In this document: piece after piece, positions 21,183-55,715 of the stretch | How the letters are laid out: the number at the start of each line of letters is the position of its first letter | How positions within the stretch are numbered: the first letter of the stretch is position 1 | Assembly (NCBI GenBank): GCA_002269645.1 | Contig: NIVC01003487.1 | Span: 1 to 64,000, forward strand | DNA: 64,000 nt | DNA from: Macrostomum lignano | Taxonomy: Eukaryota | Direction: 5' to 3' | Translations under genes and position numbers: made by a program | The notes under the pieces: model-generated | Seen by the model: the letters and a program-made list of their open reading frames with translations, nothing else | Databases searched by the model: none | What the model was told of the DNA's origin: nothing

Positions 21183-22649
21183 ATGGCGTCATCCGCCTCT
21201 TTAACCCCCGCTGAAGCCGGGGCCCCGGCAACTCCGGCCGGTGACTCTGGCACCAGCGCCGCCCCACCGGGGGCAGATGGGCTTGCCGCCGGCTCGGCTG
21301 GTGACATGCCCGCACGCGCAACCGGGCCCTCCGCTGAAGCCCGACGCACCCGCAACCAACGCCGCAACGAGCGGCGACGGCGACTACGGGGTACTGCGGG
21401 CCGGCCACCGGCGGAAGGGGAACCTAGGGAGGGCGAGGCTGCTGTTGGGCCGAAAGGAACCACAGCAACCCCTGCCCCCCAGGATACAACCCCCGCTGGT
21501 GAGCCACCCAGTATACCTGCTACAAGCGCGGCCGGGCCTTCGGGAACCGCCGCCACCAACTACGCCTCAAAGGTCAAGCTCCAACCGGCGGTCATCGTCT
21601 TCGGGGAAGAGCAGGACCTCACGGCCGACGAGCTCGACAGTGCCTGGCGCACCATCGATGCTGCGCTCATCGACCAGCTCCTGGCGGGCCGCCCTGTGAG
21701 CGTGGTCAAGTCTGCCAAGACCGACGGCTGCATCTTCATCTGGTGCAGCTCGGAGGAGAGCAGCCGCAATCTACGCGAGCTTCTGCCAAAGCTGAACTGG
21801 CCCAAGAAGCTCGGCAAGCTCGTCTTCGCCAGCGAGGGCGAACGACAGAAGACCCAGCGCTTTCGCGTCTGGATCCCGGCCGGCAGTGCCATTAAGTCCG
21901 GAGATCAGCTTAGGCAAATATTGCTAAAGCTGCACCCCGACCTTAAGGTCAACGGGCTCCTACACCACGCCACTTCCCGCAAGGAGAAGGGGGCTACGGT
22001 GATCCTAGGGCTCTCTGATGACTGGGCTAAGCGCTTGCCGCCTAAGTCCACAATTCATATTGGTCTGACTCAGCTGACCATCCTCCGTTGCGAGGAGCGG
22101 AAAGCTGATGAAGCCAAGAATGCCAAAGCTTCCGAAACCGGAACTGGGGCCCAGGCTCCTCCGGCAAAGAAGCCGAGGCAAACGGCCGATCCTATGCCCG
22201 GTAAGGCAGTTCGCGCTGCTGAAACCGGAAATCGCAATCGCAGACCCGCCAGGAGCACCCGGAGGTCCGGCCTGATCCAGCGCGCGCTGGACCAGGCCAA
22301 GAACCTTCGTGCGCATCGTGAGCGGGCCCGCGCTTCTCGCGCTCCACCCCAACAGCCAGAAGGCCAGACTCTAAGCGGGGAGGCTCCGACCGACTGGTTC
22401 GAGTCTGTGACTCACCAGGAGGCTGGCGCCACCCGCATCGACCTGACCGACGAGGCAGAGGGGACGGGCAGTGACAGCACCGAAGCACGCAGGAGAGGCG
22501 ACGGTAACGTCCACGCTGGGCTCACGTCCGCGGAGGACTCCACAGCCACCCTAACTGCTGAGGACGCTGAAACTCCCATGGAGGTCTGCGGGTCACCCAC
22601 CACTGAAAAGGAGGAGGATGACCTGCTCAACGATTCCCCAACTGCGTGA
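21183..22649 (+). CDS. LINE ORF1 protein, 488 aa; central region resembles the DUF4780-type ORF1 of LOA elements; no CCHC knuckles
   Basis: Intact ORF directly upstream of the pol ORF; RVWIP...LHPDL...GATVILGL...IHIGLTQLTI segment. Confidence 0.85.
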   Translation: MASSASLTPAEAGAPATPAGDSGTSAAPPGADGLAAGSAGDMPARATGPSAEARRTRNQRRNERRRRLRGTAGRPPAEGEPREGEAAVGPKGTTATPAPQDTTPAGEPPSIPATSAAGPSGTAATNYASKVKLQPAVIVFGEEQDLTADELDSAWRTIDAALIDQLLAGRPVSVVKSAKTDGCIFIWCSSEESSRNLRELLPKLNWPKKLGKLVFASEGERQKTQRFRVWIPAGSAIKSGDQLRQILLKLHPDLKVNGLLHHATSRKEKGATVILGLSDDWAKRLPPKSTIHIGLTQLTILRCEERKADEAKNAKASETGTGAQAPPAKKPRQTADPMPGKAVRAAETGNRNRRPARSTRRSGLIQRALDQAKNLRAHRERARASRAPPQQPEGQTLSGEAPTDWFESVTHQEAGATRIDLTDEAEGTGSDSTEARRRGDGNVHAGLTSAEDSTATLTAEDAETPMEVCGSPTTEKEEDDLLNDSPTA

Positions 22650-22651
22650 TA

Positions 22652-25600
22652 ATGATCAGCAACCAGGGAATCCATTGCCTGCAGATTAATCTGCAGCACT
22701 GCGTCGCAGCCTCGGTCAACCTTATGCGTTACGCCGAGCTCGACAAGCCGGGGCTCATCCTCGTCCAGGAACCCTGGACTCTCAGAGGTAAGCCTCAAAA
22801 CGCCCCTGCTGGCTACAATTGTTTTTATACTTACCCTCGCGAGGCCAACCAGCCTCCCAGAGCTTGCATCTTTGCGAGCAAAACGCTCAGTGCGTGGCTC
22901 AGATCGGACCTGTCCAACAGGGACATCTGCGTCATCCAATCCGAGGACCTTCTTCCTGGGAAGACCACCCTCATTGCCTCGGTTTACCTACCAGGCGATG
23001 CTGCGGTCGTCCCCAGAGCCCTCGCTACGCTGGTAGAGCTCTGCTCTGCCAAAAACTACGAGCTCATGGTTGCCGGCGACATCAACGCCCACCACACTCA
23101 CTGGGGCAGCACTGGCATTAATCAGAGAGGCGAAGACCTCCTAGCCTACGTTGCCTCTACGACCCTCGAGTTCTGCAACTCTGGGTCCACCCCTACCTTT
23201 GACAACGGACGGTGGTCGGAGGTGATCGACGCTACGCTCGCAACGCCCAGACTCTACCAGAGTATTGGGGCGTGGCGGGTGCTTCCAGTGTCCTCACTAT
23301 CGGATCACAAGTTCATCTCCTTCAACCTAATGGCCGCGCGTAGCGCAACTCGTGTTATGTGGAGACGGAACGCCAGAAATACTGATTGGGAAACCTTCGG
23401 GCTCGCCCTGAAGGAATTCCATCGGTCTCCTGGCCAACCATTCACGATCACGTCGTGCCGAGAGGCGGATGAGTGCGCGACTGTTTTGACAGAGACGCTA
23501 ACCGCCGCCTTTGAGGCGTCCTGCCCTTTAAAAGCCTATAAAGGGAAAAAATCGGCGCCGTGGTGGAATCCCGAGCTCGGCAACCTCCGTCGCAGGGCTA
23601 AGAGACTCCACCGCAGAGCAACTAAAACTAAGAGCCCTGCAGACCAAACCGCCTATCATGAAGCAATTCATGAGTTTAAAAGGCAGGTTAGGAATGCAAA
23701 GGCTCAAAAATGGCGACAATACTGTGAGGAGCTAGAGGGCTCACGCCCCACCTCCAGAGTTGTGAAAGCGCTCACGCTGGACAAAATGTCTAAGCTCTCC
23801 TCGGTCAAACGCACCGACGGTACGTCCACGGACAACCCAGGGGAAACGCTTGATGTAATGCTCACTGCGTTTTTCCCTAACGAGCCAGCTAACCAGACCA
23901 CTCCGGATCACTCGGAGGGAGGTCACGCGCTGGCTGCATCTATCATCACGGAGGACCGCATTGTGAGAGCGGCAAATTCCTTCAAGCCTTTCAAAGCCCC
24001 AGGACCCGACGGCATTGTACCGGCCCTTCTAAGAGAGGCGGTTAAATGCCCAGGCTTCCTGCGCAAACTTTGCAGCCTTCTTCGGGCATGCATCACGCTT
24101 GGTTATGTCCCGCAGGCATGGACCGAGGCAAAGGTGATCTTTATCCCTAAGCCAGGCCGCCCGGACTACCATTCTATCAAATCCTTCAGACCGATCAGCT
24201 TGACCTCCTCCCTGGTCAAGCTGATGGAGAGACTGGTGCTTTGGCGCCTTCTCTCTGTTGAGCTGAAGAACAAACCTCTCAGCGAGAACCAGCACGCTTT
24301 TCGGGCGGGTCGCTCCACTGAAAGCGCGCTGCACGTCCTGGTCGATAAACTCGAGAAGGCCGTGCTTGGTAGTGGCTTTGCTCTGGGGATCTTCCTGGAC
24401 ATCATTGGCGCCTTCGATAACGTCCTCTTTGAGGCGTTCCGAAGAGCTCTTTGTGAGAGGCTAACGCACTCACATCTCACCAGATGGATCATGTACATGA
24501 TCAGCCATCGCACGGCCACCGCCAGTCTGCTGGGCTACCAGAGGACGGTCCCCGTCTGCAAAGGTAGCCCGCAAGGTGGGGTGCTGTCTCCAGTTCTCTG
24601 GAATATGGTCATCGATGAGCTCCTCCGGGATGTTCGGCCTGACCCCATTCTGAAAGTTGGATATGCGGACGATGTCACCGCGGTGGCATCTGGTCCGTCC
24701 CCTGATACCCTCAGGGACCTTCTTCAGAACTTCATCTACGCTGCTGAGCAATGGGCGGACCGCTGTGGTTTAAGGCTCTCTGAGACTAAGACCGCAGCGA
24801 TCATGTTCACCAGCAGGACCAAGTGGCAGATTCGGCCGCTCACGCTTTACGGAAGGGAAATCCCCTTCTGCAAGCAGACTAAATGTCTGGGTATTACCCT
24901 GGACCACAGGCTGAACTGGTCTCCCCACGTTCAAACAAAAGCCAAAAAGGCCTTCGCAGTCCTCGCGCAATTGCGCAGGGCCGTCGGCACCACCTGGGGG
25001 CTCACCCCCAAGCGCCTCTGGTGGATCTACACTGCAATGGTTAGGCCCGCTATCTCGTATGGCGGCCTGATCTGGGCTAGCGCCCTGCAGATAAAGACCT
25101 GTTAGAGGCTCTCAGGAGAGCGCAAGGGCGCGCTTGTCGCACGATCATGAGCGCCCCTCCGTCTGCTCCTTACGATGGCCTCAACGCCTTCCTCAACATT
25201 CCTCCGCTGGACATCTTTGTCCGCAGGGAAGCGGCTAAGACTGCCCGCCGTCTAGCTGACGCTGGCATTCGAATCCAGCCCCATAGGGCCATGGCTAAGC
25301 GCAAGCTTCTGCCCCACGCTGACCTCTGCCTCAAGGACTTGAGAGACAGCGGCGGGCTCCACGTCCTATCTGACGGCGAACCCCGCACTCTCAACCTCTT
25401 TCAGCGCTACAAGGTCACCATCCCCTCTAGGGATGCTGCCAATGACCACTGGAATTTCCAGGAGGTCCATTGCTACACGGACGGATCCATCAAAGACGGT
25501 CGCGCCGGCTTTGGGGTCTGCATCATCATCAACGGCCGCGTAATTGCCACGCATGCCCAGCACACTGGTAGACTCTCCACAGTCTTCCAGAACGAAGTCC

Positions 25601-26355
25601 TTGCCATCAGCTCTTGCGCTGCAGAGCTAAACGCCAAGGTTACGAGAGGAAAGACTATTGTCATCCACTCCGACAGCCAAGCGGCCTTACAGGCCCTTTG
25701 CCACACCACAACGAACTCCCGGACAGTCGCCGACTGCGCCCGGCAGCTCAACCTCCTGGCCAGAAGCAATACTGTCAGGCTGAAGTGGATCCCAGGGCAC
25801 GCAGGGTTTCCGGGGAACGAGCTGGCAGACACCCTCGCCAAGAGGGGCGGCTCTGGCTCTTTTTTCGGCCCTGCCCCCCTGGTCCCTATGCCCTTGACAG
25901 TCATCAATCGTCAGATCGACGACTGGGCTGACTCCCTCCACAGGGACAGATGGGCGGGCACCCAAAACTGCCGGCAATCTCGTGCCGCGGTTCCTTGCCC
26001 GTCTCACAGGCTCAGAAACATCCTTCTGAACCAGAATCGGAAGGATATTCGAGCCCTTGTCATGACCCTTACCGGCCATGGCTACCTCGCCAGGCACTGC
26101 TTCCTCCGAGGCGACCTCGAGAGCGAAATTTGCCCCTTTTGCGAGTGCGACAATGAAGATGCTCAGCACTTTGTCTGTCACTGCCCTTTCTTTAACAGAG
26201 ACCGGCTACGCTACCTCGGGCCGAACCCGTCCATTGACGAGGTTTGCCAGCCCGACAGCATCCCACGGCTCATCCAGTTCCTTCGGGCGACTAGACGAGC
26301 CAGTTTCTTCCCAACGGAAGATCACGCTGCAGGACGGACCGGCGGACCACCCTGA
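22652..26355 (+). CDS. LINE ORF2 (AP endonuclease, reverse transcriptase, RNase H, C-terminal Cys/His finger), split by one frameshift near 25100
   Basis: APE: INLQH, VQEPW, AGDINAHH, SDH. RT: GSPQGGVLSP, GYADD. RNase H: YTDGS, HSDSQAAL, WIPGHAGFPGNELAD. C-terminus CPFC...HFVCHC. Confidence 0.92.
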
Positions 26356-41500: not shown

Positions 41501-44500
41501 AACATGTGCTTTTGTATCCGTGATTCCTGTGATCGGGGAACAATAGAGATCAAAATCCTTTGGTTTCCAATAGGGATCAGAATCCTATGGTTTCCTATAG
41601 GGATCAGAATCCTATGATCTTCAATAGGGATCAGAATCCTATGGTTTCCAATAGGGATCAGAATCCTATGGTTTCCTATAGGGATCAGAATCCTATGATC
41701 TTCAATAGGGATCAGAATCCTATGGTTTCCAATAGGGATCAGAATCCTATGGTTTCCAATAGGGATCAGAATCCTATGATTTCCAATAGGGATCAGAATC
41801 CTATGATTTCCAATAGGGATCAGAATCCTATGATTTCCAATAGGGATCAGAATCCTATGATCTTCAATAGGGATCAGAATCCTATGGTTTCCAATAGGGA
41901 TCAGAATCCTATGGTTTCCTATAGGGATCAGAATCCTATGATCTTCAATAGGGATCAGAATCCTATGGTTTCCAATAGGGATCAGAATACTATGGTTTCC
42001 AATAGGGATCAGAATCCTATGATTTCCAATAGGGATCAGAATCCTATGATTTCCAATAGGGATCAGAATCCTATGATTTCCAATAGGGATCAGAATCCTA
42101 TGGTTTCCAATAGGGATCAGAATCCTATGATTTCCAATAGGGATCAGAATCCTATGATTTCCAGTAGGGATCAGAATCCTATGGTTTCCAATAGGGATCA
42201 GAATCCTATGGTTTCCAATAGGGATCAGAATCCTATGATTTCCAATAGGGATCAGAATCCTATGATTTCCAATAGGGATCAGAATCCTATGGTTTCCAAT
42301 AGGGATCAGAATCCTATGATTTCCAATAGGGATCAGAATCCTATGATTTCCAATAGGGATCAGAATCCTATGATCTTCAATAGGGATCAGAATCCTATGG
42401 TTTCCAATGGGGATCAGAATCCTATGGTTTCCAATAGGGATCAGAATCCTATGATTTCCAATAGGGATCAGAATCCTATGATTTCCAATAGGGATCAGAA
42501 TCCTATGATTTCCAATAGGGATCAGAATCCTATGGTTTCCAATGGGGATCAGAATCCTATGGTTTCCAATAGGGATCAGAATCCTATGGTTTCCAATAGG
42601 GATCAGAATCCTATGATTTCCTATAGGGATCAGAATCCTATGATCTTCAATAGGGATCAGAATCCTATGGTTTCCAATAGGGATCAGAATACTATGGTTT
42701 CCAATAGGGATCAGAATCCTATGATTTCCAATAGGGATCAGAATCCTATGGTTTCCAATAGGGATCAGAATCCTATGGTTTCCAATAGGGATCAGAATCC
42801 TATGGTTTCCAATAGGGATCAGAATCCTATGATTTCCAATAGGGATCAGAATCCTATGATTTCCAATAGGGATCAGAATCCTATGGTTTCCAATAGGGAT
42901 CAGAATCCTATGATTTCCAATAGGGATCAGAATCCTATGATTTCCAATAGGGATCAGAATCCTATGATCTTCAATAGGGATCAGAATCCTATGGTTTCCA
43001 ATGGGGATCAGAATCCTATGGTTTCCAATAGGGATCAGAATCCTATGGTTTCCAATAGGGATCAGAATCCTATGATCTTCAATAGGGATCAGAATCCTAT
43101 GGTTTCCAATAGGGATCAGAATCCTATGGTTTCCAATAGGGATCAGAATCCTATGATCTTCAATGGGGATCAGAATCCTATGATCTCCAATAGGGATCAG
43201 AATCCTATGCTTTCCAATAGGGATCAAAATCCTATGATCTTCAATGGGGATCAGAATCCTATGATCTCCAATAGGGATCAGAATCCTATGGTTTCCAATA
43301 GGGATCAGAATCCCACCCATAACAATAGGGATCAGAATCCCGGCCCTCGTTTCCAGCACACCACACAACTTAAAAAGCATGCTCACGGAGCAGAGACGAG
43401 ACTCACTGTCCTCACTTACCCCACTGCACCAGGACGCCACCCCACCAAGCAGCAGCAGCAGGCGGAGGAGTCTCCTGAACCACCCGGCGACCTGTCCGAT
43501 GCGTCAATCAAAAGCCGCAGCACCTTGAACAGCATAGTCACCGTCATCGAGAGGACGCATCGACGCTCCAGCAGCGGCCAGCAGCAGCCGCAGCAGCAGC
43601 TCGTCCTGCTGCCCGACTCCGACAGCAACGGCGAGAGCGACGGCGAAGAAGGCGGCAGTCCGCGCTGCCAGCTTCGCCGAAGCCAGCAGCAAAGCAAGCA
43701 GTCCGGGCAAAAGCAGCGAAAACAGCAGCCGCAGCCGCAGCAGTCCTCGGGTGACCGGTCGTCTTCGTCGACGCTCGACGGCGACGAAGAGGTGCCGGCG
43801 TCGCCGACCTCCCCTGAAGAGGCCGGAGCTGCCACCGCCGCATCCGCTGAGGACTTCGATGATAAAGATGGAGCGGAGTCTGAGGTAGGCTTGAAGGGTC
43901 TGTCCGTGTGTGTCTGTCTGTCCGCATGTGTCTCTGTGTGTCTGTCAGTCCGTCTGTCCGCATGTCTGTCTGTCTGTCAGCCCGTCTGTCCGCATGTCTG
44001 TCTGTCTGTCAGTCCGTCTGTCCGCATGTCTGTCTGTCTGTCAGTCCGTCTGTCCGTCTGCCTGTCAGTCCGTCTGTCCGCATGTCTATCCTAATTCCTG
44101 TCCGCCTGTAGGCCTCCGACCTCACCAGCATCTCGGCGGCCGGAGCCTGGGACTACAGCCTCATCCGCTCGCAGCTGCAGTACGAGTTCAACACCTGGGA
44201 CCGGCCGGCCATTCGCACCTTCGGCATCCGCGTCCGCGAGATCCAGTGCCCGCCCTCCGAGACCGTCATCGCCGGCTGGACGGACGAGGAGCTGCTCGCC
44301 AGGGTCCGCCAGCTCGGCCGCCTCCGCGGCGCCGCCGTCCGCCTCAACCCGGCGACGCGGCAGTTCAGCGGCCGGGTCCGCGTGCACGTCAACCTGATCC
44401 GGCCCATCCGGCTCGGCCGCTCGGAGCTGCCGCAGCTGGTGCCGAGGGGTCAGAGCCGCCTGCTGCAGATCACCAGCGCTGTGCGCAGCCAGGAGGTCGT

Positions 44501-47500
44501 GCAGGCGCTGCTCACCGCCCTGCAGGTCAAGGAGCAGGCCTACAAGTTTGCCCTGTATGAGCACTCCATTGAGGGGGACAAGTCGGGTGAGTGGAGACTG
44601 GGATTCAGGATTTCTGGACATACATGCGCAACCTCCAAAATTCGTTCGGCCGTGCGACTTAGTTTTAACAAAAATGCGACGTAGTTTTTGGCCAAAAATG
44701 CGACTTACATGTAAAAAACCCTAAAGCAAATTTAACGCAACTTTGGGTAAACGGCAGGAGTAACTATGACTGCCTTATTAAGCCAAAATGCCTCGTCAGC
44801 TACTTAGTACTACTTCTTGGTTATTTTTTCGGGATGGCATTTTTGCGACTTTCTTGGTTGGCTGCCAAATCGGTCGGCCGAATCGGCCGACTCGGCCGAC
44901 TGTTGCGCATGTATGTTTCTGGATGCTGGGGATTCGGGATTTCTGGATGCTGGGGATTCGGGATTTGTGGATGCTAAGGATTCGGGATTTGTGGATGCTG
45001 GGGATTCAGGATTCGGGATTTCTGGATGCTGGGGATTCAGGGTTCGTGATTTGTGGATGATGGGGGATTGGGATTTGTGGATGCTGGGGATTTGGGATTT
45101 GTGGATGCTGGGGATTCGGGATTAGTGGATGTTACATACATGCGCAACTGCTGGCCGAGCTGGCCGATCCGGCCACCGTAAATCATGGCTGACCAGGGGT
45201 AAGTCGCAAAATTGAGTCGACCAAAAACAGAAAAACACAAGAACCAAGAAAGAAAGGCAACAGGAAAGCGAAAAAAAGAGCAGTTCAAGGAAAAATGGTG
45301 AAGGAAAAGAAAAACAAGTCGCATAAAAAGCAAACTAAGTCGCAAAAAGGATCAGGTAAGTCGCAACAGGAGCAACTAAGTCGCAAAAAGGATCAGGTAA
45401 GTCGCATAAGAAGCAAACTAAGTCGCAAAAAGGATCAGGTAGGTCGCAACAGGAGCAACTAAGTCGCAAAAAGGATCAGGTAAGTCGCATAAGAAGCAAA
45501 CTAAGTCGCAAAAAGGATCAGGTAAGTCGCAACAGGAGCAACTAAGTCGCAAAAAGGATCAGGTAAGTCGCATAAGAAGCAAACTAAGTCGCAAAAAGGA
45601 TCAGGTAAGTCGCATAAGAAGCAAACTAAGTCGCAAAAAGGATCAGGTAAGTCGCAACAGGAGCAACTAAGTCGCAAAAAGGATCAGGTAAGTCGCATAA
45701 GAAGCAAACTAAGTCGCAAAAAGGATCAGGTAAGTCGCAACAGGAGCAACTAAGTCGCAAAAAGGATCAGGTAAGTCGCAAAAAGGATCAGGTAAGTCGC
45801 AAAAGGAGCAACTAAGTTGTAAAAAGGATCAGGTAAGTTGCAATAAGAGCAGCTATATTTAGAATTCAGTTATGTCGCCGATTTATAAGTTTTTAACTAA
45901 GCAAAGCAAGCCAATAACAAGATAGCAATTTAGCAAAATATTAAGTATATTGTGATTATGTAATGTATCTTATCAGACGTCAATTTCAAACTAAAAGAGT
46001 CCACTCTGTAAGATATTTTTTTCTGCTTCGTTGTCATTTGTAACTCGTTCCTGTCGACCTCCAGGAGCATCAGATCGCCAGTGGCTTTTGAGCCAATCAT
46101 TTACATATGCATCAGGCTTGAAATTAGCCAACGGAGGTCCATTTATACGAATCCGCAGCAAATTCTCCAAAGTTTTAGGCGTGAGGCGTGACCTTCTATC
46201 ATAGGCTATGTGCTTATAGATTGAAAACCCCCGTTCAGCCTCTGCAGATGATATAGGCAGTGTTAGGACAACCAGGATCAGTTTTTTTATTTTAGGCAGC
46301 CATTCAACTGTCCTTTTTTCCATAAAGTGACTCCAAAATTTTACGGGGCCTCTACTGCGGTAGGCACAAAAGTCAAACTTGTGTGAAGTAACCAGGCTGT
46401 TTATTAGAATAGAAAACTGCCCAGATATTGTCCTGATGTTGTCTCTAGAATCTGATTCTGAATCTGAATCAGAGTCTCCTGAGACAGGGCTCTCGTCTTG
46501 CATACCAAAGCGTCTAGCCAACGGAATTATTCTTGAGCTGTAAGTGAAAACTGTATGTAATGTCTCAGCCGTAGGCAATGATTCCGGATTGAGTACATCA
46601 AATATTGAATAATCATCCTCAGGAAAATATTTACGCAGTTGACTGACAATGCTATCAATAATGACAAGCCGGATTTCGCTCAGTGCTGGATACGGTCCTA
46701 CATCAGTAGCATCAGTACTGCATCCCCGGCGTCTTAGTCGACTACATGGCTGTTTCAACTCAAACCTTTGTGTTGAATCGTCAGTACCAGCAGGGCACAC
46801 AAAGTCCGAATGAGATAGGTCATTTGTATGACAACGTACACGGTATTCTATATCTGCAGTAGGTCCCACAACTCTGCGGCATCTGCACGAATTTAAGAAA
46901 TCCATAACTCGAGGACCATTGTTTGTCTTTAACATTTCTAAGGAACGGATCAAGTCATTGTGGCGTTTTTGTAATCCTATAAATGTACCTCTGGCACTTT
47001 GAAACTGCAAAGATTCAAATTCCAAAAGCTTTAGAATGTCAGTGAGAAATAGGTGCAAGGAATAATATCGTACATTTTTCAATGTCTTCAGCAATCCGGA
47101 GGCAGTAGCTTTACTTTCATCATCAAAATCTGATGAAGTTGAGATGATATTTTCTAGATTTGTGAGAAGAAGGTAGTATGACTTCCTAATTACATCCAGG
47201 GCGGACACTTCTGATGCAACCCATCTTATGCGATAGATTCTTTTAAGTTCATAAAAAACTTTGTCCAATGCTTCTGAAGTTTCAAGTAATGAAGCTTTGC
47301 GCTTTGTAGCATGTCGCATGTAAAATTTGTATAGAGAATTTATGCTTGTATCAAGGTGCTGCATATATGGGAAGTTTTCAAAAGCATGATAAATTGAAAG
47401 TTCCAACTTATGGGCTGCACAGTGATGCTGGAAGAAATTGTTCTTAGCCCAAGGCCTGAGTCTGCTCACCAATCCTGCTCGATTTCCTGTCATGACTGCT

Positions 47501-50500
47501 GCACCATCAGTTGTCACACCCCATAGTCTTTCTTTGATACCTTCCAGAATATTGTCTTCAGTGAACATACCAATAAGCATTTCATAAATTCTTTGTCCTG
47601 TTTCTACTTGAGCAAGGCGTTTGAACCGATAGAAAAACATCATAGGGTTGCTGTTTTCAAGAATTCTGAAGTAGATCATCAAATAACTATTAGAATGGAT
47701 GTCAGATGTTGTGTCTAATACAATTGAAATTGGAAGATCTTTAGAATTTTTTATATACTTCAGTAGCGTTTTATGCATGGTCATACTGATTGATTCAGCC
47801 ATTGCAGTAGCACTTTTACGATGCCTGTGATGACTGCCCATATCCAAGCCATTCTTTATTTGTAAATCAACCATCAGATTATGTGCACTAAATGGAACAT
47901 TGGCTTTTACTTCAGCATATACAGTCGTTAAAACCCTGGCAGTTATTTCATCTCTTTTGGTTTGTGCTAGTTTAGCCGCCCTATTCATCTCGTTAATTTG
48001 CCTTGCAAGTATGGAGTGGTGTTTCTCTTTCATCCAATTGATGGCTTCAGAGTGAAATAAACTTAATGAATGTCTTTGTAGTTTTCTTCGTACACTATCC
48101 TTTGCATGTCCATTTGGAACATAACCTGATTCGGTCACAAATGTCATGCCACGTTTACTTGCTTCATTTGCTGCTGAGGGAAGTGCATTGGCATACTGTT
48201 GACAGATTCGGCACTGTATTCCAGATCGCGATAGATCATCGGTATTTTGAGTGTATTGAAACCATGTCTTCATTTCATTGGTTACAAATTTCCTCGAAAA
48301 GTACCTAAAATAAATTATTTAGATTAGAGGCAGGCAGTAGATTTAGTAGTAATAGACTAAAAAGGCATTTAATTAAAAGAGAAAAATAAATGCATTAATT
48401 TTTCTTACGCTGACTGATGTGTTTCCAAGGAATCCAGCCACTGCTCTTGAAAACTAGATGTATCTTCCCAATCCTTTCTTAGGACTTGTTCGGTTCTTGC
48501 TTCTCCTGTCCCTGATGGTCCTGATCCTAATGCTGATGTTGCTAAACATGCATCTGCAATTGTACTTATGCATGGCCTTTTTCTTTCGGAAGGTCCTGCA
48601 ATTACAGAGTCACTAATTTGAATATCAACGTCTGGATCACACGAATTGGACGCATCAGCATCTATATCAACAGCTGAAGGCAAAGGCCTACGTCCATGAC
48701 AACAAGATCGCTTTAAGGATTGCCTTTGAACATTTATTTGCCTAACAATTTCTACTTCTAGATCAATTGTTTGCTGGTCACTTTCCAGCACCTTATCCAC
48801 TTCCTGCTCTTGTAGACTTCCAGCTGAGCAAAAGGCACTTTGTTCCGCATGCCCTGCTGTTTGCGCAGTTTGAACAGCTTGATCTCGATTGGCTGCTATT
48901 TCCTGTGAATATTCTATAGCCTTTGCCAGTTCGTTACGATGTGAGCTTGCTGAGCATGCAGATGGGGGTGGCCTTTCACTTCGTGATGGTGAGCTAGGAG
49001 AACTTGTTGGTGAATTAACGATAGTTCCAATATTCTCCTCAAAAATCCAATGTGCGCCTGAGCAGTCATTTTCTTTACCTGGAGTCAATTTGCCAAGTTT
49101 CCACCTTGTAAAAAGCAAAGGCTTTTGTACTTCACTGTTGGATGTAGGACACCGGTTTATGGAATAGTCTTCATGGCCAACTTCATCCCATTCTCTTGCT
49201 GGATTTAGGATGTAGTTAGGCTTATCTCTTAAGGTTGAGTAAATTGATTCAAAAAATGTGCACCTGTTATTGTGTGTACTTCGAGCATATATTATCATGT
49301 CATGTACATTACGCCTTATTATTTCAGCCAAGGAATCGTCAATTGTAAGCTTGTCTAAAAAAATAGGCCTTCTTTGGGTTAAATGCATCTTAGCTAGCCG
49401 CAGTTTTCCAATGCTACCTCTTGAACTAGCATCATCAGTTCTAGAATAGTCTCTTTGATGCAAGAGGATGATGGCCATTGCACTTTTACCATTTCCATTT
49501 TTTAATGCATTTGGATCAGTTGGCAGTGTCCTACTAGCAGACTTGAAGAAACTAGCAATAGACAACTGTGATGATCCTGCAGAGGCAGGAGCTGTTCTTG
49601 GTAGCCCATGTCCAGCTTTTCCTTGGTATCCAATAGAGGAGTCAGTGAAAAACATATCTGCTGTTCCCAGTTTTTCCTTTGATGCTATTACAAACAAACT
49701 ATTTCTCTCTTTGAAGCTAGTTCGATAGAAGTCAGCAGAAAATGTTATCACTGGCTTTCTAACATCACCACTATATTCTTGGACACCAATCAAAAGAAAA
49801 TCACGCAGTCGTACAGATTCTAAAGTTGAGGCAGTAGCACTACTTGGACAAACTTTTTTTAACTCTATGAACTCTGCATATTCCTGCGATCCAATATTTG
49901 GTTCATCTGTATTAAGCTCATTAATGACAATGGAGCACTCTTGAGCTAGGCAGTTATTAAAAAGTAATATGAGCATCATGCTATGCAGAACACTCAAACA
50001 ATGAGTGCAAGGCATGATCCTTTCTTTGTCTTTCATTCAAAGACGAAATTTCTGGCTACAATGTTAAGGAATTTTTTTGTTAGGGATAGCTGTGATCAAA
50101 TAGTAATGATACAACTGGTATAAAATGAAAATAAACTCAATAACATATTTTTTGGGAACTTACCTTTGACGTGTAATTACTAACTGAATATAATAGTAAC
50201 ACCAAGGATTCCACAAAGGCTACTGGATTGAAGTTAAGTTTAAAGGGCTAAAAGTCGAAGGTTAAATAAAATGAGATAACCTGTAAAGCAAGAGAAAGAT
50301 ATTCTTTTTATGGGCAAAGCAAAGTCAGCGCGGCAAAGGTAGCATGGGCAAAGGTAGAGTGAAGTAAAAGAAAATGCCAAAGAGCTAAATATGTACAAGA
50401 AAAGGTCAACCAACTATGCTAGTTGGATTTTTATATGATAAGATTAAGAACAAAAAGAGCCTTGGAAATGGTAAGGACAGCGGCTGCACATGTATGCTAA

Positions 50501-52053
50501 TGGTAGCTGGTGCTTGGTAGCACAAGGAGTATGTTGACATTTGGAAATTTAGCACAGGGGAATGAAGTATTCAACACTAGCACTATTGTACTTAGGATGG
50601 CTATGTTCAAGTTTAGTATATTTGGACTATACATTTTAGGATTTTATTTTTTCCGAAAGGGTAAGTTTGACAAGTGTACTGTTTGTATGTACTTTTATAT
50701 ATTCCTTTCGATAAGGACAACATGCTACATGTATTACCACATTCATTTTTCACTCATTTCTATAGCAAACTATTCATGCATACAAAAACTATTTATATGT
50801 AGATTGTAGACATTGTTTGTTTATGGCCCATGCATCAATGCTGTGCAGCAATATAGCATTGTTGCACTGAAAAAAAGTTATATACTATTACTCTAAAATA
50901 ATCTCTAAAATGATGTTAAAATGTCCAGTTTCCTAAAAAATAGCAATAGAGGCCTGCATGAATGCACAGCAAGCTTGCCAGTGAGTAAAAACCTCCGTAA
51001 CTCTGTTGGCCTTCTTTAAGTCCCATAAAAAAGGCGTAGCGCAAAGGGTAGTCGGGTGAAAATAAATTTAATGGAACAATATGACACTTTAGTTCATAAC
51101 TTCATACCATAGACATAAGTATATATATAATTATAGACACTCATATTATTAGCATTGCTATACTCCCAGCCATGCTTGAGTGCCTCATTAATGCATAGTT
51201 TAGCAATACTCGTTAGTCGTTATAATGGATGTATAAAAACAAACAAGTAAATTTTAGAAATTCAGTTTTTCAACATTCGTGATTCGTAATATCTTGTTTT
51301 GCAAAATGTTTTGTAATGTTTTATAATGTCTTGTTTTGTAATATTTCGTGAAAACATTGAAACTTAACTTGAAGACAAGCTATATATTTTCTAGAAAAAG
51401 CTTCTACTAACGAAAAAACTAAGTCGCAAAACTAAGTCGCATTTTTGGTCAAAACTAAGTCGCACGGCCAGCGTAATTTCAGAGGTTGCGCATGTATGGG
51501 ATGTTAGGGATTCAGGATTGGAGGTGCTGGATAGAGTGCTTTAAGTTTTAAATTATTTAATACTTTACTTCGAAGTATATTCACTATTCGAATGGGTTCA
51601 TCATTCTGAGCCCTTAGTGTTCACGACGGTTGACCTGTCAAACCTTTCCATTATTATCTTCGAATCAAAGGCCAATTGTACTCGTATGATTTTCGTGTGT
51701 TCACGAGTTCTGGTCCCGCGCCACCCCTTCACAGTGACCTTCCGTCGGCTGCACCCCACCGAGAGCCCGCTGGCCCTGGTGCTGTCCTGGCTGCACGGCA
51801 CCTCAGCGGTAGCGGACGGCTCCTCCGAAGACGATGGCAGCTCCGTGTTCGAAAGAAAGAAAATCGTGCTGCAGGAGAACGACTCGGGCCTGGTTAATGT
51901 GAGTTCTGGGCACCGCCTGTGCATTGCGGCTGCAATAAGACAGACAGACAGCCAGGCAGACAGACAGACAGACAGACAGACAGCCAGGCAGACAGACAGG
52001 CAGACAGACAGACCAGCAGACAGACAGACAGACAGTCAGACAGCCAGCCAGGC

Positions 52054-52094
<41 letters not shown>

Positions 52095-52208
52095 GGCAGG
52101 TAGGCAGGCAGGCAGGCAGACAGCCAGGCAGACAGCCAGGCAGACAAACAGACAGACAGGCAGGCAGGCAGACAGCCAGGCAGACAAACAGGCAGGCAGA
52201 CAGCCAGG

Positions 52209-52239
<31 letters not shown>

Positions 52240-52360
52240 CCAGGCAGACAGACAGACAGACAGACAGGCAGGCAGGCAGACAGACAGACAGACAGACAGG
52301 CAGACAGGCAGGCAGGCAGGGAGACAGCCAGGCAGACAAACAGACAGGCAGACAGCCAGG

Positions 52361-52391
<31 letters not shown>

Positions 52392-52449
52392 CCAGACAGA
52401 CAGACAGACAGGCAGGCAGACAGACAGACAGACAGACAGACAGCCAGGC

Positions 52450-52502
<53 letters not shown>

Positions 52503-52600
52503 GGCAGGCAGACAGCCAGGCAGACAAACAGACAGACAGGCAGGCAGGCAGACAGCCAGGCAGACAAACAGGCAGGCAGACAGCCAGGCAGACAGCCAGG

Positions 52601-52635
<35 letters not shown>

Positions 52636-52798
52636 GCAGACAGACAGACAGACAGACAGACACAGACAGGCAGACAGAGAGACAGGCAGACAGAGAGACA
52701 GACAGACAGGCAGGCAGGCAGACAGCCAGGCAGACAAACAGACAGACAGGCAGGCAGGCAGACAGCGAGGCAGACAAACAGGCAGGCAGACAGCCAGG

Positions 52799-52855
<57 letters not shown>

Positions 52856-53069
52856 CAGCAGACGCAGCCGGCAGCCCCCCCCCCCCAATCCGCAGTGGTC
52901 GGCCTTCTCCGTGCCAGAGCTCAGCAACTTCCTGCACATCCTGCAGCGGGAGGAGTCAGAGTACCGCGAGTCCATCCAGCTCAAGTACCTGCTTGTGAAG
53001 CGGGAGATGCGGCGCCGCCTGAGGCAGCTGGACAAGCAGAAGCAGGCGCTGGAGGAGGACTGGCCGTAG
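35509..53069 (+). CDS. RASSF: RASSF1/3/5-like Ras-association + SARAH protein; exons 35509-35730, 36328-37024, 39303-ca.39505, ca.43433-43884, 44112-44586, 51735-51898, 52896-53069
   Basis: RA domain (FSGRVRVHVNLIRPI...EVVQALL...KFALYE...FRRLHPTESPL...IVLQEND) and SARAH (VNWSAFSVPELSNFLHILQREESEY). The last three exons are secure; the exon 3/4 junction phase is ambiguous. Confidence 0.85.
37205..37666. repeat. 20-bp intronic minisatellite (CCTCCTCAGAGACTCGTTCC)
   Basis: Tandem array. Confidence 0.95.
38575..39085. repeat. 20-bp intronic minisatellite (TTTAGTTCAGTTTAGATGAG)
   Basis: Tandem array with an internal larger duplication. Confidence 0.93.
40560..40870. repeat. 51-bp pyrimidine-rich tandem repeat
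   Basis: CTATCCCTTCTCACTCCCTACTCCTTAGCTCTACATCAACCTAGCCTGACT, about 6 copies. Confidence 0.9.
41560..43340. repeat. 27-bp intronic minisatellite (AATAGGGATCAGAATCCTATGGTTTCC)
   Basis: About 65 copies; stop-free on both strands in one frame. Confidence 0.97.
43900..44085. repeat. (TCTG)-derived microsatellite filling the short RASSF intron 43885-44111
   Basis: Direct reading of the sequence. Confidence 0.9.
44619..44915. mobile_element. 297-bp hAT MITE (element A), same family as element B, opposite orientation
   Basis: 14-bp TIR CATACATGCGCAAC; perfect 8-bp TSD TTTCTGGA (44611-44618, 44916-44923). Confidence 0.92.
44745..44808 (+). other. Degenerate eukaryotic 28S rDNA fragment inside MITE A (not an rRNA gene)
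   Basis: GGGTAAACGGCAGGAGTAACTATGACTGCCTTATTAAGCCAAAATGCCTCGTCAGCTACTTAGT versus the recalled conserved LSU sequence GGGTAAACGGCGGGAGTAACTATGACTCTCTTAAGGTAGCCAAATGCCTCGTCATCTAATTAGT. Confidence 0.85.
45330..45850. repeat. Subterminal 41-42 bp tandem array of element B, two AAGTCGCA motifs per unit
   Basis: AACTAAGTCGCAAAAAGGATCAGGTAAGTCGCA(A/T).. repeated about 11 times; probable transposase-binding sites (inference). Confidence 0.9.
45991..50036 (-). CDS. hAT transposase with a long N-terminal extension; exons 50036-48409 and 48304-45991; 1313 aa if spliced
   Basis: DDE core: VLDTTSD, TTDGAAVMTG, HCAAH, RWVAS, LPISSAEAERGFS (ZNF862/DUF4371-like). N-terminal CxxC...H zinc finger. The GT-AG intron 48408-48305 joins the two ORFs in frame. 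Confidence 0.88.
51938..52860. repeat. (CAGA)n/(CAGG)n tetranucleotide array filling the last RASSF intron
   Basis: Direct reading; the overlapping long ORFs are artefacts. Confidence 0.97.
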
Positions 53070-54436: not shown

Positions 54437-55715
54437 TTAGGGTGAGCCAAAAGTTTCCGGAATTTTTAGAATCGAACTTTTAGTTAATTTTTGTCTATGG
54501 AAAAGCTTAAAAGCAGCAACCATCTACTATGCTGTTGGCCAGCCTTATCATCACTCTTTAGCTTAACATTGCTCAGTTTCCCGACCCTGCCTACTTAAGC
54601 CAGCAAACGCATCCAATGGAACTGCCAAGAACTGAATGGCGAGCATGCAATTCTGCTCAACCACTTTCATGCGGGACGCAACGCAGCAGAGGCACATCGC
54701 GAGTTGTTGCAGCTGATGGACCCACATGCACCCTCCAAGTCGTCGGTATACGACTGGTTCTCTCGCTTTGCTGAGGAGAACTATGAGCTGAAGGACAAGC
54801 CGAGGTCAGGCCGACCCCCTGCTGCTGATGGCGATGCCGTTCTCCAAGCCCTTGAGGACAATCCGGACTACAGCGTGCGCAAGCTGTCAGCCGCTACTGG
54901 GGTGTCCTATGGCACGGTCCGGCGAAGCCTATGCAGACAATTAAGGTGCCGAAGAAGCTAACTCTGATGCTCCATGAGCTGACACCCCAGCAGTTGAGAG
55001 CCAGGGTGGATGTGGCAACTTCGAATCTTCGCCAGGCCGGTTCGCCAAACTTTCTCAAGTCGATAATCGCTCAAGACGAGAAGTGGGTCTGCTATGAGAA
55101 CCCAAGCACATCAGCCGTCTGTGTCGATGCTTCTGAAGAACTACCCAGCTGCCCAATGCGGAACCCCCACTGCGGCAAGGAGCTGCTCTCTTTCTGGTTC
55201 TGCTCGTCTGGCCCTGTTTTCTGGGAGGTCATCCCGCATGGCATGGCTGTGAACGCGGAGGTGATCTGCAGCGAACTGGAGCAGGTCGCCCGTTTGCTGC
55301 GATCCGTGTGCCCGGGACACTGCGACAAGGTGCTCCTCTTCGACAATGCGCGGCCTCACAAAGCAAGACTCACCCAGGCCAAGCTGGCAAGCCTGGGCTT
55401 CAGTGTTTTGCCCCACCCACCATACTCGCCAGACCTCTCGCCATGTGACTACCATGTGTTCAGGTCTCTCCAGAGCTTTTGTGATGGACAGCGGTTCGCC
55501 AACAAGCAACATGTGGAGCAGGCAGTGCAGAAATGGATTGATTCAAAGCCTGCGAGCTTCTGGAGGGAGGGGATTGAGGCATTGCCAGCAAGATGGGAGA
55601 GGGTCAGGGCCTTGAATGGCAACTACATCACATCGCTGTAAACTGTTTGTTCTTGACACTATATTTGTTATAGTTTTAAAATGTTCAAATTCCGGAAACT
55701 TTTGGCTCACCCTAA
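54437..55715 (+). mobile_element. Full-length mariner (DD34D), 1279 bp; transposase 54616-55641 disrupted by two frameshifts
   Basis: 29-bp TIR TTAGGGTGAGCCAAAAGTTTCCGGAATTT with TA on both sides. QDEKW, FDNARPH and HPPYSPDLSPCD with 34 residues between the last two Asp. Frameshifts near 54648 and 54940. Confidence 0.95.

What the first reader, a model, noticed from the sequence alone, without database searches (positions are those of the whole stretch)
48405..50036. hAT transposase fused to a signal-peptide plus lamin-tail-like domain
Seen in the sequence: inside the TIR/TSD-bounded element B, an intact 543-aa ORF is joined by a canonical 104-nt intron (TCAGC/gtaaga ... ttttag/GTAC) in frame to an intact transposase, giving 1313 aa. 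It starts with a signal-peptide-like stretch (CLSVLHSMMLILLFNNCLA-QE). The following Cys-bounded region of about 300 aa carries IVINELNTDEP...EFIEL at its start and EDYSINRC...LTPGKENDC at its end. From memory, that motif pair characterises lamin-tail-like (LTD) repeats of secreted animal and bacterial proteins. Inference: a captured secretory-type module on a nuclear DDE enzyme, kept free of stops over 1.6 kb. I know of no description of this architecture in hAT elements. It could be cargo with its own function, for example in host interaction, element spread or regulation.
Basis: partly seen in the sequence, partly recalled or inferred. Interest (0 to 1): 0.9.

Follow-up and report, generated by a model that had tools for sequence, protein, structure and literature searches.

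The report
hAT transposase with lamin-tail-like head
An apparently active cut-and-paste transposon of the flatworm Macrostomum lignano encodes a transposase whose front end is a secretion-type signal sequence plus a lamin-tail-like (LTD) domain; this layout is shared by a large, apparently undescribed clade of hAT transposons, and it is puzzling because a transposase has to work in the nucleus.

Summary
ORF1 (48405-50036, minus strand, 543 aa) joins through a 104-nt GT..AG intron to a 760-aa hAT transposase. The resulting 1313-aa product is identical to GenBank PAA51197.1, an M. lignano hypothetical protein. The element spans 45135-51498, with 19-nt TIRs and an 8-bp TSD. A 297-bp MITE of the same family lies 220 bp away.

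The LTD assignment is supported:
- A family profile matches the LTD repeats of an amphioxus surface protein (hhalign 99.7%, E 1.8e-25).
- Relatives give sub-threshold Pfam LTD hits.
- The AlphaFold model of a compact relative has human lamin B1 tail as its best PDB match.

A signal-peptide-like segment precedes the LTD in 73% of 63 relatives, against 2-8% in controls.

The "captured cargo" reading is not supported. The module is ancestral to a large hAT clade (233 clusters at 50% identity). At least 31 relatives carry LTD and transposase in one ORF. The LTD is about as conserved as the catalytic core.

How a signal-peptide-bearing transposase reaches DNA is unresolved. I found no published description. 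Rating: new variant of a known kind, interest about 0.6.

The parts
45127..45134 (.). Target-site duplication GGATGTTA, left copy
   Evidence: Identical 8-mer at 51499-51506.
45135..45153 (.). Terminal inverted repeat at the 3' end of the element relative to the gene: CATACATGCGCAACTGCTG
   Evidence: 19 nt, 89% complementary to 51480-51498.
45316..45855 (+). Subterminal tandem array carrying about 22 copies of TAAGTCGCA (41/83-nt periods). Probably transposase-binding subterminal repeats.
   Evidence: TRF. The motif occurs 28 times in the window against 0.4 expected. The binding role is inferred by analogy with other hAT elements.
45991..48304 (-). Exon 2: last base of codon 543, residues 544-1313 and the stop codon. 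It holds the hAT transposase: BED-like zinc finger C574/C577/H621/H627 (48052-48213), catalytic D740 (47713-47715), D809 (47506-47508) and E1233 (46234-46236), CxxH 838-841, RW 903-904, and the hAT dimerisation region (46150-46347).
   Evidence: Pfam Dimer_Tnp_hAT 4.2e-8. Hermes alignment over the SSAEAERGFS motif. These residues are invariant in 12 full-length relatives. Coordinates checked.
48305..48408 (-). 104-nt intron, GTAAGA...TTTTAG. If it is retained, the frame stops at TAA (48405-48407), which overlaps the donor.
   Evidence: The GenBank model PAA51197.1 uses the same junction. The donor sits at the same place in the locus of relative P0001.
48409..49025 (-). Poorly conserved, Ser/Pro/Gln-rich linker (residues 338-543). 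It has a basic RKR at 485-487 and the conserved WEDTxxF motif at 523-529.
   Evidence: Only the last ~30 residues are conserved among relatives. No transmembrane segment.
49026..49943 (-). LTD-like beta-sandwich domain (residues 32-337) with two long insertions. Invariant residues: E40, E58, L59, D246, C296, P319, N323, C325.
   Evidence: hhalign against amphioxus LTD repeats: 99.7%, E 1.8e-25. Pfam LTD sub-threshold in 5 of 16 relatives. AF2 pLDDT 83. Lamin B1 tail is the top PDB match for the model of a compact relative. Invariant residues.
49944..50036 (-). Signal-peptide-like N-terminus (residues 1-31): basic n-region MKDKER, hydrophobic core LSVLHSMMLILLF, then NNCLA|QE.
   Evidence: Predicted helix 11-28. 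An equivalent segment is present in 73% of 63 relatives, against 2.3% of control windows and 6-8% of simulated random ORF extensions. No SignalP was available.
50037..51479 (-). 5' non-coding part of the element (promoter/5' UTR presumed). Three TAAGTCGCA motifs at 51420-51464 and an internal TIR-like sequence at 50475-50496.
   Evidence: The promoter role is inferred only.
51480..51498 (.). Terminal inverted repeat at the 5' end of the element: CAGAGGTTGCGCATGTATG
51499..51506 (.). Target-site duplication GGATGTTA, right copy
44619..44915 (.). 297-bp non-autonomous (MITE) copy of the same family, with the same 14-nt termini and its own 8-bp TSD TTTCTGGA (44611-44618 and 44916-44923).

Best explanation
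This is an autonomous hAT transposon of Macrostomum lignano that looks recently active. It belongs to the DUF4371 / FAM200-ZBED5 RNase-H-like type, i.e. the Buster/Charlie-like branch.

Shown:
- Its single gene (two exons) encodes a 1313-aa protein.
- In front of the usual zinc finger, DDE core and hAT dimerisation region sits a conserved N-terminal module. The module is a secretion-type signal sequence, one LTD beta-sandwich of about 300 aa, and a variable linker that ends in a WEDTxxF motif.
- The module is not cargo of this copy. It is ancestral to a large hAT clade and about as conserved as the enzyme.

Inferred origin: the 5' end (signal peptide plus first LTD) of an animal cell-surface LTD-repeat gene of the amphioxus LOC118427361 type.

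Inferred mechanism (about 45% likely):
- The LTD works with the transposase as an accessory interaction module, in partner or substrate binding or in assembly of the multimer on the many TAAGTCGCA subterminal repeats.
- The signal sequence diverts the primary product to the ER, so nuclear activity must come from molecules that escape targeting or lack the signal.
- In this element a bypass exists. Exon 2 opens with its own in-frame ATG (M554, MKTWF...), and the GenBank model of a sister copy starts exactly there.
- The signal-plus-LTD head would then act as a built-in limiter or regulator of nuclear transposase rather than as an independent secreted product.
For: Architecture and splicing. The product is identical to the RNA-seq-based GenBank model PAA51197.1.

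Transposon status:
- TIR and 8-bp TSD.
- A MITE with its own TSD.
- Several copies at 90% identity or more in the M. lignano genome.
- DDE, CxxH, RW and zinc-finger residues invariant.
- hAT dimerisation domain and Hermes match.
- Relatives carry PF14291, PF27073 (FAM200-ZBED5_RNase-like) and PF05699.

LTD homology:
- hhalign 99.7%, E 1.8e-25, over the whole 184-aa amphioxus repeat.
- That amphioxus protein scores Pfam LTD 7.5e-95.
- Sub-threshold LTD hits fall at the right place in relatives.
- Lamin B1, B2 and A tails are among the top PDB matches.

Ancestral and constrained:
- 233 clusters at 50% identity.
- 31 relatives with both parts in one ORF.
- Identity of the LTD parallels that of the transposase.

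Signal sequence:
- Hydropathy statistics and null simulation.
- In the amphioxus protein a signal peptide likewise directly precedes the first LTD.

Bypass: M554 starts exon 2, and PAA88322.1 starts at MKTWF.
Against: - No signal-peptide predictor could be run, and the window's own hydrophobic core is one of the weaker ones (KD 2.21).
- About 27% of relatives lack the segment, including several full-length ones. It is therefore dispensable in some lineages, or their start codons are mis-called.
- No stop-transfer segment lies between LTD and transposase. An efficient signal peptide would put the whole enzyme in the ER lumen, which conflicts with the LTD being selected through transposition.
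- Pfam LTD does not reach its threshold on any family member, and finds nothing in the window protein itself.
- Foldseek with the window's own model gave only weak antibody-like matches. The lamin match for the relative has E 6e-3, which is not formally significant.
- The sister-copy model that starts at M554 may only reflect a broken ORF1 in that copy.
- Most relatives lack the intron, so the bypass cannot be general.
- Nothing here shows what the LTD binds.
Confidence: 0.55

Rival explanations
1. Two-product model, the first reader's 'cargo' reading. ORF1 is made on its own by intron retention, because the frame stops at the TAA that overlaps the donor. It is secreted as an LTD protein with its own role, for example host interaction or regulation. 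The transposase is translated separately from M554 on an alternatively started or SL trans-spliced mRNA.
For: - The stop codon sits exactly at the donor, both here and in relative P0001.
- Exon 2 opens with an in-frame ATG, and a sister-copy model starts there.
- About 39% of M. lignano genes are trans-spliced (PMC5730564).
- The signal-like N-terminus and the Cys pair shared with extracellular LTD repeats.
Against: - A phase-2 GTAAG donor gives TAA automatically.
- At least 31 relatives have LTD and transposase in one uninterrupted ORF.
- The RNA-seq-based model joins the exons.
- A product that does not serve transposition would not stay fused, and as conserved as the enzyme, across a deep clade.
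Confidence: 0.15
2. The hydrophobic N-terminus is not used as an ER signal. The full-length protein is nuclear, and the LTD acts there as a DNA-, chromatin-, nuclear-envelope- or protein-binding domain, or as an oligomerisation domain, of the transposase. The N-terminal helix is structural or a leftover of the domain's origin.
For: - The LTD is retained in lineages without the hydrophobic segment, with the Cys pair still invariant.
- The basic RKR in the linker could serve as a nuclear localisation signal.
- This reading avoids the topological problem.
- From general knowledge, lamin Ig-fold tails are reported to bind DNA and nuclear proteins. This was not tested here.
Against: - A leftover would not keep n-h-c signal-peptide organisation in 73% of relatives that share only 25-40% identity, with no sequence conservation in the segment itself.
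- The closest non-transposon relatives are extracellular repeats, not lamins.
Confidence: 0.25
3. Annotation or assembly artefact, or a non-functional transduplicated host fragment that merely lies upstream of the transposase.
For: Pfam finds nothing in ORF1. Most relatives come from unannotated metagenome or SRA contigs.
Against: - 543 open codons.
- The product is identical to an independent GenBank model.
- Homologues down to 24% identity have invariant residues and the same domain order.
- Confident AF2 models.
Confidence: 0.02

Closest known systems
Buster/Charlie-type hAT transposases and their domesticated relatives (DUF4371 PF14291 + FAM200-ZBED5 RNase-like PF27073 + Dimer_Tnp_hAT PF05699; for example TcBuster, human ZBED5 and FAM200A, named from general knowledge)
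   Same: Zinc finger, DDE RNase-H-like core with CxxH and RW motifs, C-terminal hAT dimerisation region, 8-bp TSD, short TIRs and subterminal repeats.
   Different: A ~550-aa N-terminal extension (signal-like segment, LTD, linker) that I find described for no hAT transposase. The two TSDs seen here do not fit the nnnTAnnn consensus recalled for Buster elements, but two sites are too few to judge.
Animal cell-surface LTD-repeat proteins (Branchiostoma floridae LOC118427361, XP_035693005.1; C3ZWX4_BRAFL 'LTD domain-containing protein')
   Same: - The whole 184-aa repeat unit aligns, including INExNxDxP, E(F/Y)IEL, GYFxIG, LVDxxVY, SxxRC and PTPGxxNxC, and the conserved Cys pair.
- A signal peptide directly precedes the first LTD.
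   Different: One LTD instead of 8-9 tandem copies. Two long insertions (about 40 and 30 aa). No C-terminal membrane anchor. Fused to a transposase.
Bacterial surface or secreted nucleases with signal peptide + LTD + nuclease (Vibrio cholerae Xds, PMC6746945)
   Same: The same order of parts: signal peptide, N-terminal LTD, then a DNA-cleaving enzyme.
   Different: - The enzyme is an EEP exonuclease with an OB fold, not a DDE transposase.
- The proteins are bacterial and truly extracytoplasmic.
- In Xds the LTD was dispensable for nuclease activity and for localisation, so it gives no function to borrow.
Nuclear lamin tail Ig-fold (human lamin B1, PDB 3JT0; lamin B2, 2LLL; lamin A/C, 7CRG)
   Same: Best PDB fold matches for the model of compact relative P0013 (3JT0: probability 0.98, TM 0.54 normalised to the target, 18% identity).
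   Different: E-values of 6e-3 or weaker. No direct sequence match. Lamin tails are nuclear, carry no signal peptide and lack the conserved Cys pair.
P-element truncated repressor made by intron retention (from general knowledge)
   Same: A retained intron would here also give an N-terminal, catalytically dead product (ORF1, 543 aa).
   Different: No evidence here that such a product is made or that it represses. The superfamily is different.

Membership tests
hAT superfamily transposon | Short terminal inverted repeats flanked by an 8-bp target-site duplication | tested here: met
   19-nt TIRs (89% complementary) at 45135-45153 and 51480-51498. The TSD GGATGTTA is perfect. A second case is the MITE with TSD TTTCTGGA.
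hAT superfamily transposon | DDE catalytic triad in an RNase-H-like core with the CxxH and RW motifs | tested here: met
   D740, D809, E1233, C838/H841 and R903/W904 are invariant in 12 full-length relatives. The region around E1233 aligns with the Hermes SSAASERTFS motif. Catalysis itself was not assayed.
hAT superfamily transposon | C-terminal hAT dimerisation domain (PF05699) | tested here: met
   E 4.2e-8, 33.3 bits against a cut-off of 21.4.
hAT, Buster/Charlie-like branch | DUF4371 (PF14291) and FAM200-ZBED5 RNase-like (PF27073) regions | tested here: inconclusive
   Precomputed hits exist on close and distant relatives (P0159, P0160, P0043, P0161, P0083). The Pfam copy I could scan did not report them on the window protein itself. 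No hAT phylogeny was built.
Lamin tail domain (LTD, PF00932) | Pfam model at or above its gathering score | tested here: not met
   No hit on the window protein. Five of 16 relatives hit below threshold (best 21.3 bits against 34.3, E 3.7e-4), always at the start of the domain.
Lamin tail domain (LTD, PF00932) | Profile-level homology to bona fide LTDs over the whole domain | tested here: met
   - Family profile against 8 repeats of amphioxus P0126: hhalign 99.7%, E 1.8e-25, columns 2-184 of 184.
- P0126 itself: Pfam LTD 7.5e-95, 8 stretches.
- hmmsearch of 1.84 billion proteins with the family profile finds P0126 at 2.8e-11.
Lamin tail domain (LTD, PF00932) | Ig-like beta-sandwich fold like the lamin tail | tested here: inconclusive
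   - Window model (pLDDT 83): only weak antibody V-domain matches, best E 0.044.
- Compact relative P0013 (pLDDT 87): lamin B1 tail is the top match (E 6.3e-3, probability 0.98, TM 0.54), and lamins B2 and A also appear, but nothing reaches E 1e-3.
Secretory (Sec-type) signal peptide | N-terminal basic n-region, hydrophobic h-region of 7-15 residues, small residues before the cleavage site | tested here: inconclusive
   - The pattern is visible in the window protein and in most relatives.
- 73% of 63 relatives have a hydrophobic 9-mer within 40 aa before the first strand, against 2.3% in control windows and 6-8% in simulated ORF extensions.
- The median distance from Met to the first strand is 23 aa.
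- No trained predictor (SignalP, DeepTMHMM) was available.
Secretory (Sec-type) signal peptide | Actual ER targeting and cleavage | not testable with these tools
   This needs expression or in-vitro translocation experiments.
Domesticated (host) hAT-derived gene | Single-copy orthologue without TIRs or TSD | tested here: not met
   TIRs, TSD, a MITE and several near-identical copies in the genome.

The most novel reading that the evidence does not exclude
The signal peptide is functional and essential. Under this reading, this clade of transposases truly passes through the secretory pathway, for example to be delivered from expressing cells to other cells (germ line) or to other hosts, or to reach chromatin by an unconventional route from the ER or nuclear-envelope lumen. 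The extracellular-type, disulfide-bonded LTD would serve as the uptake or docking module. That would be a new way for a cut-and-paste transposon to spread or to be regulated.
Probability: 0.1. Interest if true: 0.9.

Novelty: new variant of a known kind. Interest (0 to 1): 0.6.

Why it matters
hAT transposases are textbook nuclear enzymes, built from a zinc finger, a DDE core and a dimerisation domain. Here a whole, deeply branching clade carries an extra N-terminal module of extracellular type, a signal sequence plus an LTD. The module has been kept about as well as the catalytic core, and I found no description of it.

- If the signal sequence works, it raises a directly testable question: how and where does such a transposase meet its DNA? 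Answers could include dosage control, isoform switching or an unconventional route.
- If it does not work, the LTD is a new accessory domain of eukaryotic transposases. It would also be a rare case in which an LTD function could be assayed, by measuring transposition with and without it.

M. lignano has transgenesis, so the experiments are feasible. An apparently intact autonomous copy with a matching MITE could also interest people building transposon tools for flatworms.

Tried and rejected
- **Direct Pfam scan of ORF1:** no family, even at E up to 1.
- **Sequence search of ORF1 against PDB chains:** nothing at E up to 10.
- **Foldseek of the window's own 345-aa model against the PDB:** only weak antibody-domain matches. 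I therefore modelled a compact relative, which did bring up lamin tails.
- **TIR/TSD search around two distant full-length relatives (L005, L006):** only AT-rich noise, so their ends remain undefined.
- **Taxonomic range of the clade:** cluster look-ups gave no organism names except M. lignano and Branchiostoma.
- **dN/dS:** not attempted. The closest relatives with DNA in hand are only 53-62% identical in protein, so dS would be saturated. Other M. lignano copies were available only as proteins.
- **Literature searches:** LTD + transposase, LTD domain + transposon, hAT transposase + signal peptide, transposase + N-terminal signal peptide + DNA transposon, and Macrostomum + hAT. None turned up a description.
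- **Rejected explanations:**
  - Random ORF extension as the source of the hydrophobic N-terminus.
  - A membrane-anchored topology with a stop-transfer segment.
  - A domesticated host gene (TIR, TSD and MITE present).
  - A recent capture by this copy.
Full report
**1. What is in the sequence**

The finding lies on the minus strand. ORF1 runs from the ATG at 50036 to a TAA at 48405-48407 and is 543 aa long. A second ORF of 760 aa (48273-45991) follows it.

The donor ...TCAGC|GTAAGA (exon end 48409) and the acceptor TTTTAG|GTAC (exon start 48304) delimit a 104-nt intron. Splicing gives one open frame of 1313 aa.

That product is identical, residue for residue, to GenBank PAA51197.1 (BOX15_Mlig009210g1, 'hypothetical protein', Macrostomum lignano). 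The window is therefore flatworm DNA. The same junction was used by an annotation built from RNA-seq transcript assemblies (PMC5730564).

**2. The element**

- The gene sits in a 6364-bp element at 45135-51498.
- The element has 19-nt terminal inverted repeats, CATACATGCGCAACTGCTG and its imperfect complement.
- It is flanked by a perfect 8-bp duplication, GGATGTTA.
- The motif TAAGTCGCA occurs 28 times in the window against 0.4 expected. About 22 copies form a tandem array just inside the 3' end, three lie near the 5' end, and two lie in the MITE described next.
- 220 bp to the left lies a 297-bp non-autonomous copy (44619-44915) with the same termini and its own perfect TSD, TTTCTGGA.
- Both copies are inserted in a 24-bp-unit satellite inside an intron of a RASSF-like host gene on the plus strand. 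That gene has an RA-like exon ending near 44590 and a Nore1-SARAH exon at 52896-53066 (E 1.8e-13).
- The same 90%-identity protein cluster holds three further M. lignano gene models.

This is a young, multi-copy hAT family, not a domesticated gene.

**3. The transposase part**

- Pfam finds the hAT dimerisation domain (4.2e-8).
- The SSAEAERGFS stretch aligns with the Hermes segment that carries its catalytic Glu.
- In an alignment of 12 full-length relatives, these residues are invariant: D740, D809, E1233, C838/H841, R903/W904, and a C574-C577...H621-H627 zinc finger.
- Relatives carry precomputed PF14291 (DUF4371), PF27073 (FAM200-ZBED5 RNase-like) and PF05699. This places the enzyme in the Buster/Charlie-like part of the superfamily. 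I did not build a tree.

**4. Is ORF1 an LTD?**

Direct tests on the window protein fail. Pfam gives nothing and a sequence search of PDB chains gives nothing. Indirect tests are strong:

- (a) A profile of four close homologues, searched against 1.84 billion representative proteins, found 233 proteins at E ≤ 1e-3. Among them is one non-transposon protein, the amphioxus LOC118427361 product (2.8e-11, nine matched stretches).
- (b) That amphioxus protein is a signal peptide, tandem LTDs and a C-terminal membrane anchor. It scores Pfam LTD at 7.5e-95.
- (c) hhalign of a 72-sequence family alignment against eight of its repeats gives 99.7% probability and E 1.8e-25. The match covers the whole 184-aa unit and shows the transposon domain to be one unit with two insertions.
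- (d) Five of 16 relatives give sub-threshold Pfam LTD hits, always at the domain start.
- (e) The AlphaFold model of the window domain is confident (pLDDT 83, pTM 0.82). Its Foldseek matches in the PDB are only weak antibody-like sandwiches. The model of a compact relative (P0013, pLDDT 87) has human lamin B1 tail as its top match (probability 0.98, TM 0.54, E 6.3e-3), with lamins B2 and A also listed.

I conclude that residues ~32-337 are a divergent LTD. It is closest to extracellular animal LTD repeats, not to lamins. The formal Pfam threshold is not met and the fold test is only suggestive.

**5. Is there a signal peptide?**

No trained predictor was available, so this rests on pattern and statistics.

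- The window protein begins with a basic stretch (MKDKER), then a hydrophobic core (LSVLHSMMLILLF), then NNCLA|QEC. AlphaFold draws residues 11-28 as a helix.
- Among 63 relatives whose first LTD strand could be located, 73% have a 9-residue window with mean Kyte-Doolittle hydropathy ≥ 2.2 in the 40 residues before that strand. The figure is 2.3% for random windows of the same proteins.
- The median distance from the initiator Met to the strand is 23 residues.
- A simulation of random upstream ORF extension at 25-40% GC gives a Met in only 17-23% of cases, a median length of 8-11 residues, and a hydrophobic window in 6-8%. Chance therefore does not explain the pattern.
- The segment has no conserved sequence, only conserved character, as expected of a signal peptide.
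- In the amphioxus protein a signal peptide likewise abuts the first LTD.
- About a quarter of relatives lack the segment, including some full-length ones.
- No hydrophobic stop-transfer segment lies between the LTD and the transposase in any of 13 full-length proteins.

**6. Capture or ancestral?**

- Of the 158 relatives retrieved, 31 contain both the LTD and the same transposase in one predicted ORF of 1000-1250 aa. Most of the others are short contigs or first exons.
- Against 13 full-length relatives, identity to the window protein is 24-37% in the LTD, 21-36% in the transposase, and essentially nil in the linker except for its last ~30 residues (the WEDTxxF motif).
- Eight LTD residues, including the Cys pair C296/C325 shared with the amphioxus repeats, are invariant.
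- The intron is lineage-specific. It is shared with the 62%-identical P0001, whose locus has GTAAGT at the same place. It is absent in P0003, P0005, P0011 and the long proteins.

The module was therefore acquired once, long ago, probably from the 5' end of a surface LTD-repeat gene. It has since evolved as part of the transposase. 'Cargo captured by element B' is not supported.

**7. How it may work**

Shown: the architecture, its age and its constraint.

Inferred: because a transposon protein is selected only through transposition or colonisation success, the LTD most likely serves the transposase. Candidate roles are partner or substrate binding, or help in assembling the multimer on the many subterminal repeats.

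The signal sequence creates a real puzzle. By ordinary rules it would send the entire protein into the ER lumen.

My preferred reading (about 45%) is that it diverts much of the product away from the nucleus, and that the active molecules escape targeting or lack the signal. In this element exon 2 opens with its own ATG (M554), and the RNA-seq-based model of a sister copy, PAA88322.1, starts exactly at MKTWF. That sister copy may simply have a broken ORF1.

Rival readings:
- The segment is not used as a signal and the whole protein is nuclear (about 25%).
- ORF1 is made alone by intron retention and secreted (about 15%).
- The enzyme truly uses the secretory route for spread (about 10%).

The bacterial parallel, Xds of V. 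cholerae (signal peptide, LTD, then a nuclease), does not help. Its LTD was dispensable for both activity and localisation (PMC6746945).

**8. Novelty and verdict**

- The protein sequence is public but unnamed. Its sister copies are annotated only by their hAT or DUF4371 domains.
- Five full-text searches found no paper that links LTDs or signal peptides with hAT or other DNA transposases (one candidate paper was checked and was irrelevant).
- I rate it a new variant of a known kind: an ordinary hAT core with an unusual, conserved, extracellular-type head.
Its 'capture/cargo' inference should be replaced by 'ancestral N-terminal module of a large hAT clade'.
- Interest is about 0.6. The finding is surprising to a transposon specialist and directly testable in a transgenic-capable flatworm, but every functional statement is still inference.

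Noticed in passing
window 44619-44915: A 297-bp MITE of the same hAT family, with the same CATACATGCGCAAC termini, two TAAGTCGCA motifs and a perfect 8-bp TSD TTTCTGGA. It lies 220 bp from the autonomous copy in the same satellite, which suggests local hopping or a target preference for the satellite.
   Followed up: partly
window 44916-45131 and 51507-51540: A satellite with a 24-bp unit (TTTGTGGATGCTGGGGATTCGGGA) into which both the MITE and the autonomous element are inserted.
   Followed up: partly
window ~44100-44590 and 52896-53066 (+): GC-rich exons of a RASSF-like host gene: an RA-like domain (PF21989, 2.8e-5) and a Nore1-SARAH domain (PF16517, 1.8e-13). The hAT element lies antisense in the intervening intron(s).
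   Followed up: partly
window 51938-52855: A 918-bp (AGAC)n microsatellite of about 230 copies. It creates long spurious ORFs in several frames just upstream of the SARAH exon.
   Followed up: no
window 50475-50496: An internal sequence, GGACAGCGGCTGCACATGTATG, that is 82% complementary to the left TIR. It could be an old or alternative element end, which would make the outer ~1 kb (50497-51498) a later addition or a nested piece.
   Followed up: no
window 21183-26355 (+): A GC-rich non-LTR retrotransposon with three consecutive ORFs. ORF2 has endonuclease (Exo_endo_phos) and RVT_1 domains, and the next ORF has RNase H.
   Followed up: partly
window 54931-55641 (+): A mariner/Tc1-like transposase fragment (Transposase_1, 5e-10; DDE_3).
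   Followed up: no
window 1-6000: Strongly strand-asymmetric repeat (GC skew about -0.69, AT skew about +0.67). It is made of roughly 20-nt units such as CCAGACACCCACACTG/CCAGACACCAACACTA.
   Followed up: no
relatives; window 45994-46014 for the C-terminal residues ...NILQSGLF: Many full-length relatives end in a conserved C-terminal tail, (S/R)x(L/I)F (for example QSGLF, YSRLF, RSLLF, RSELF, NSALF), just before the stop codon. Its function is unknown.
   Followed up: no
M. lignano proteins of the P0160 cluster: A second M. lignano hAT family whose transposase is 73% identical, with 18 gene models. Whether it also has the LTD head was not checked. Logan fragments P0004 and P0006 (64-73% identical to ORF1) may belong to it.
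   Followed up: no
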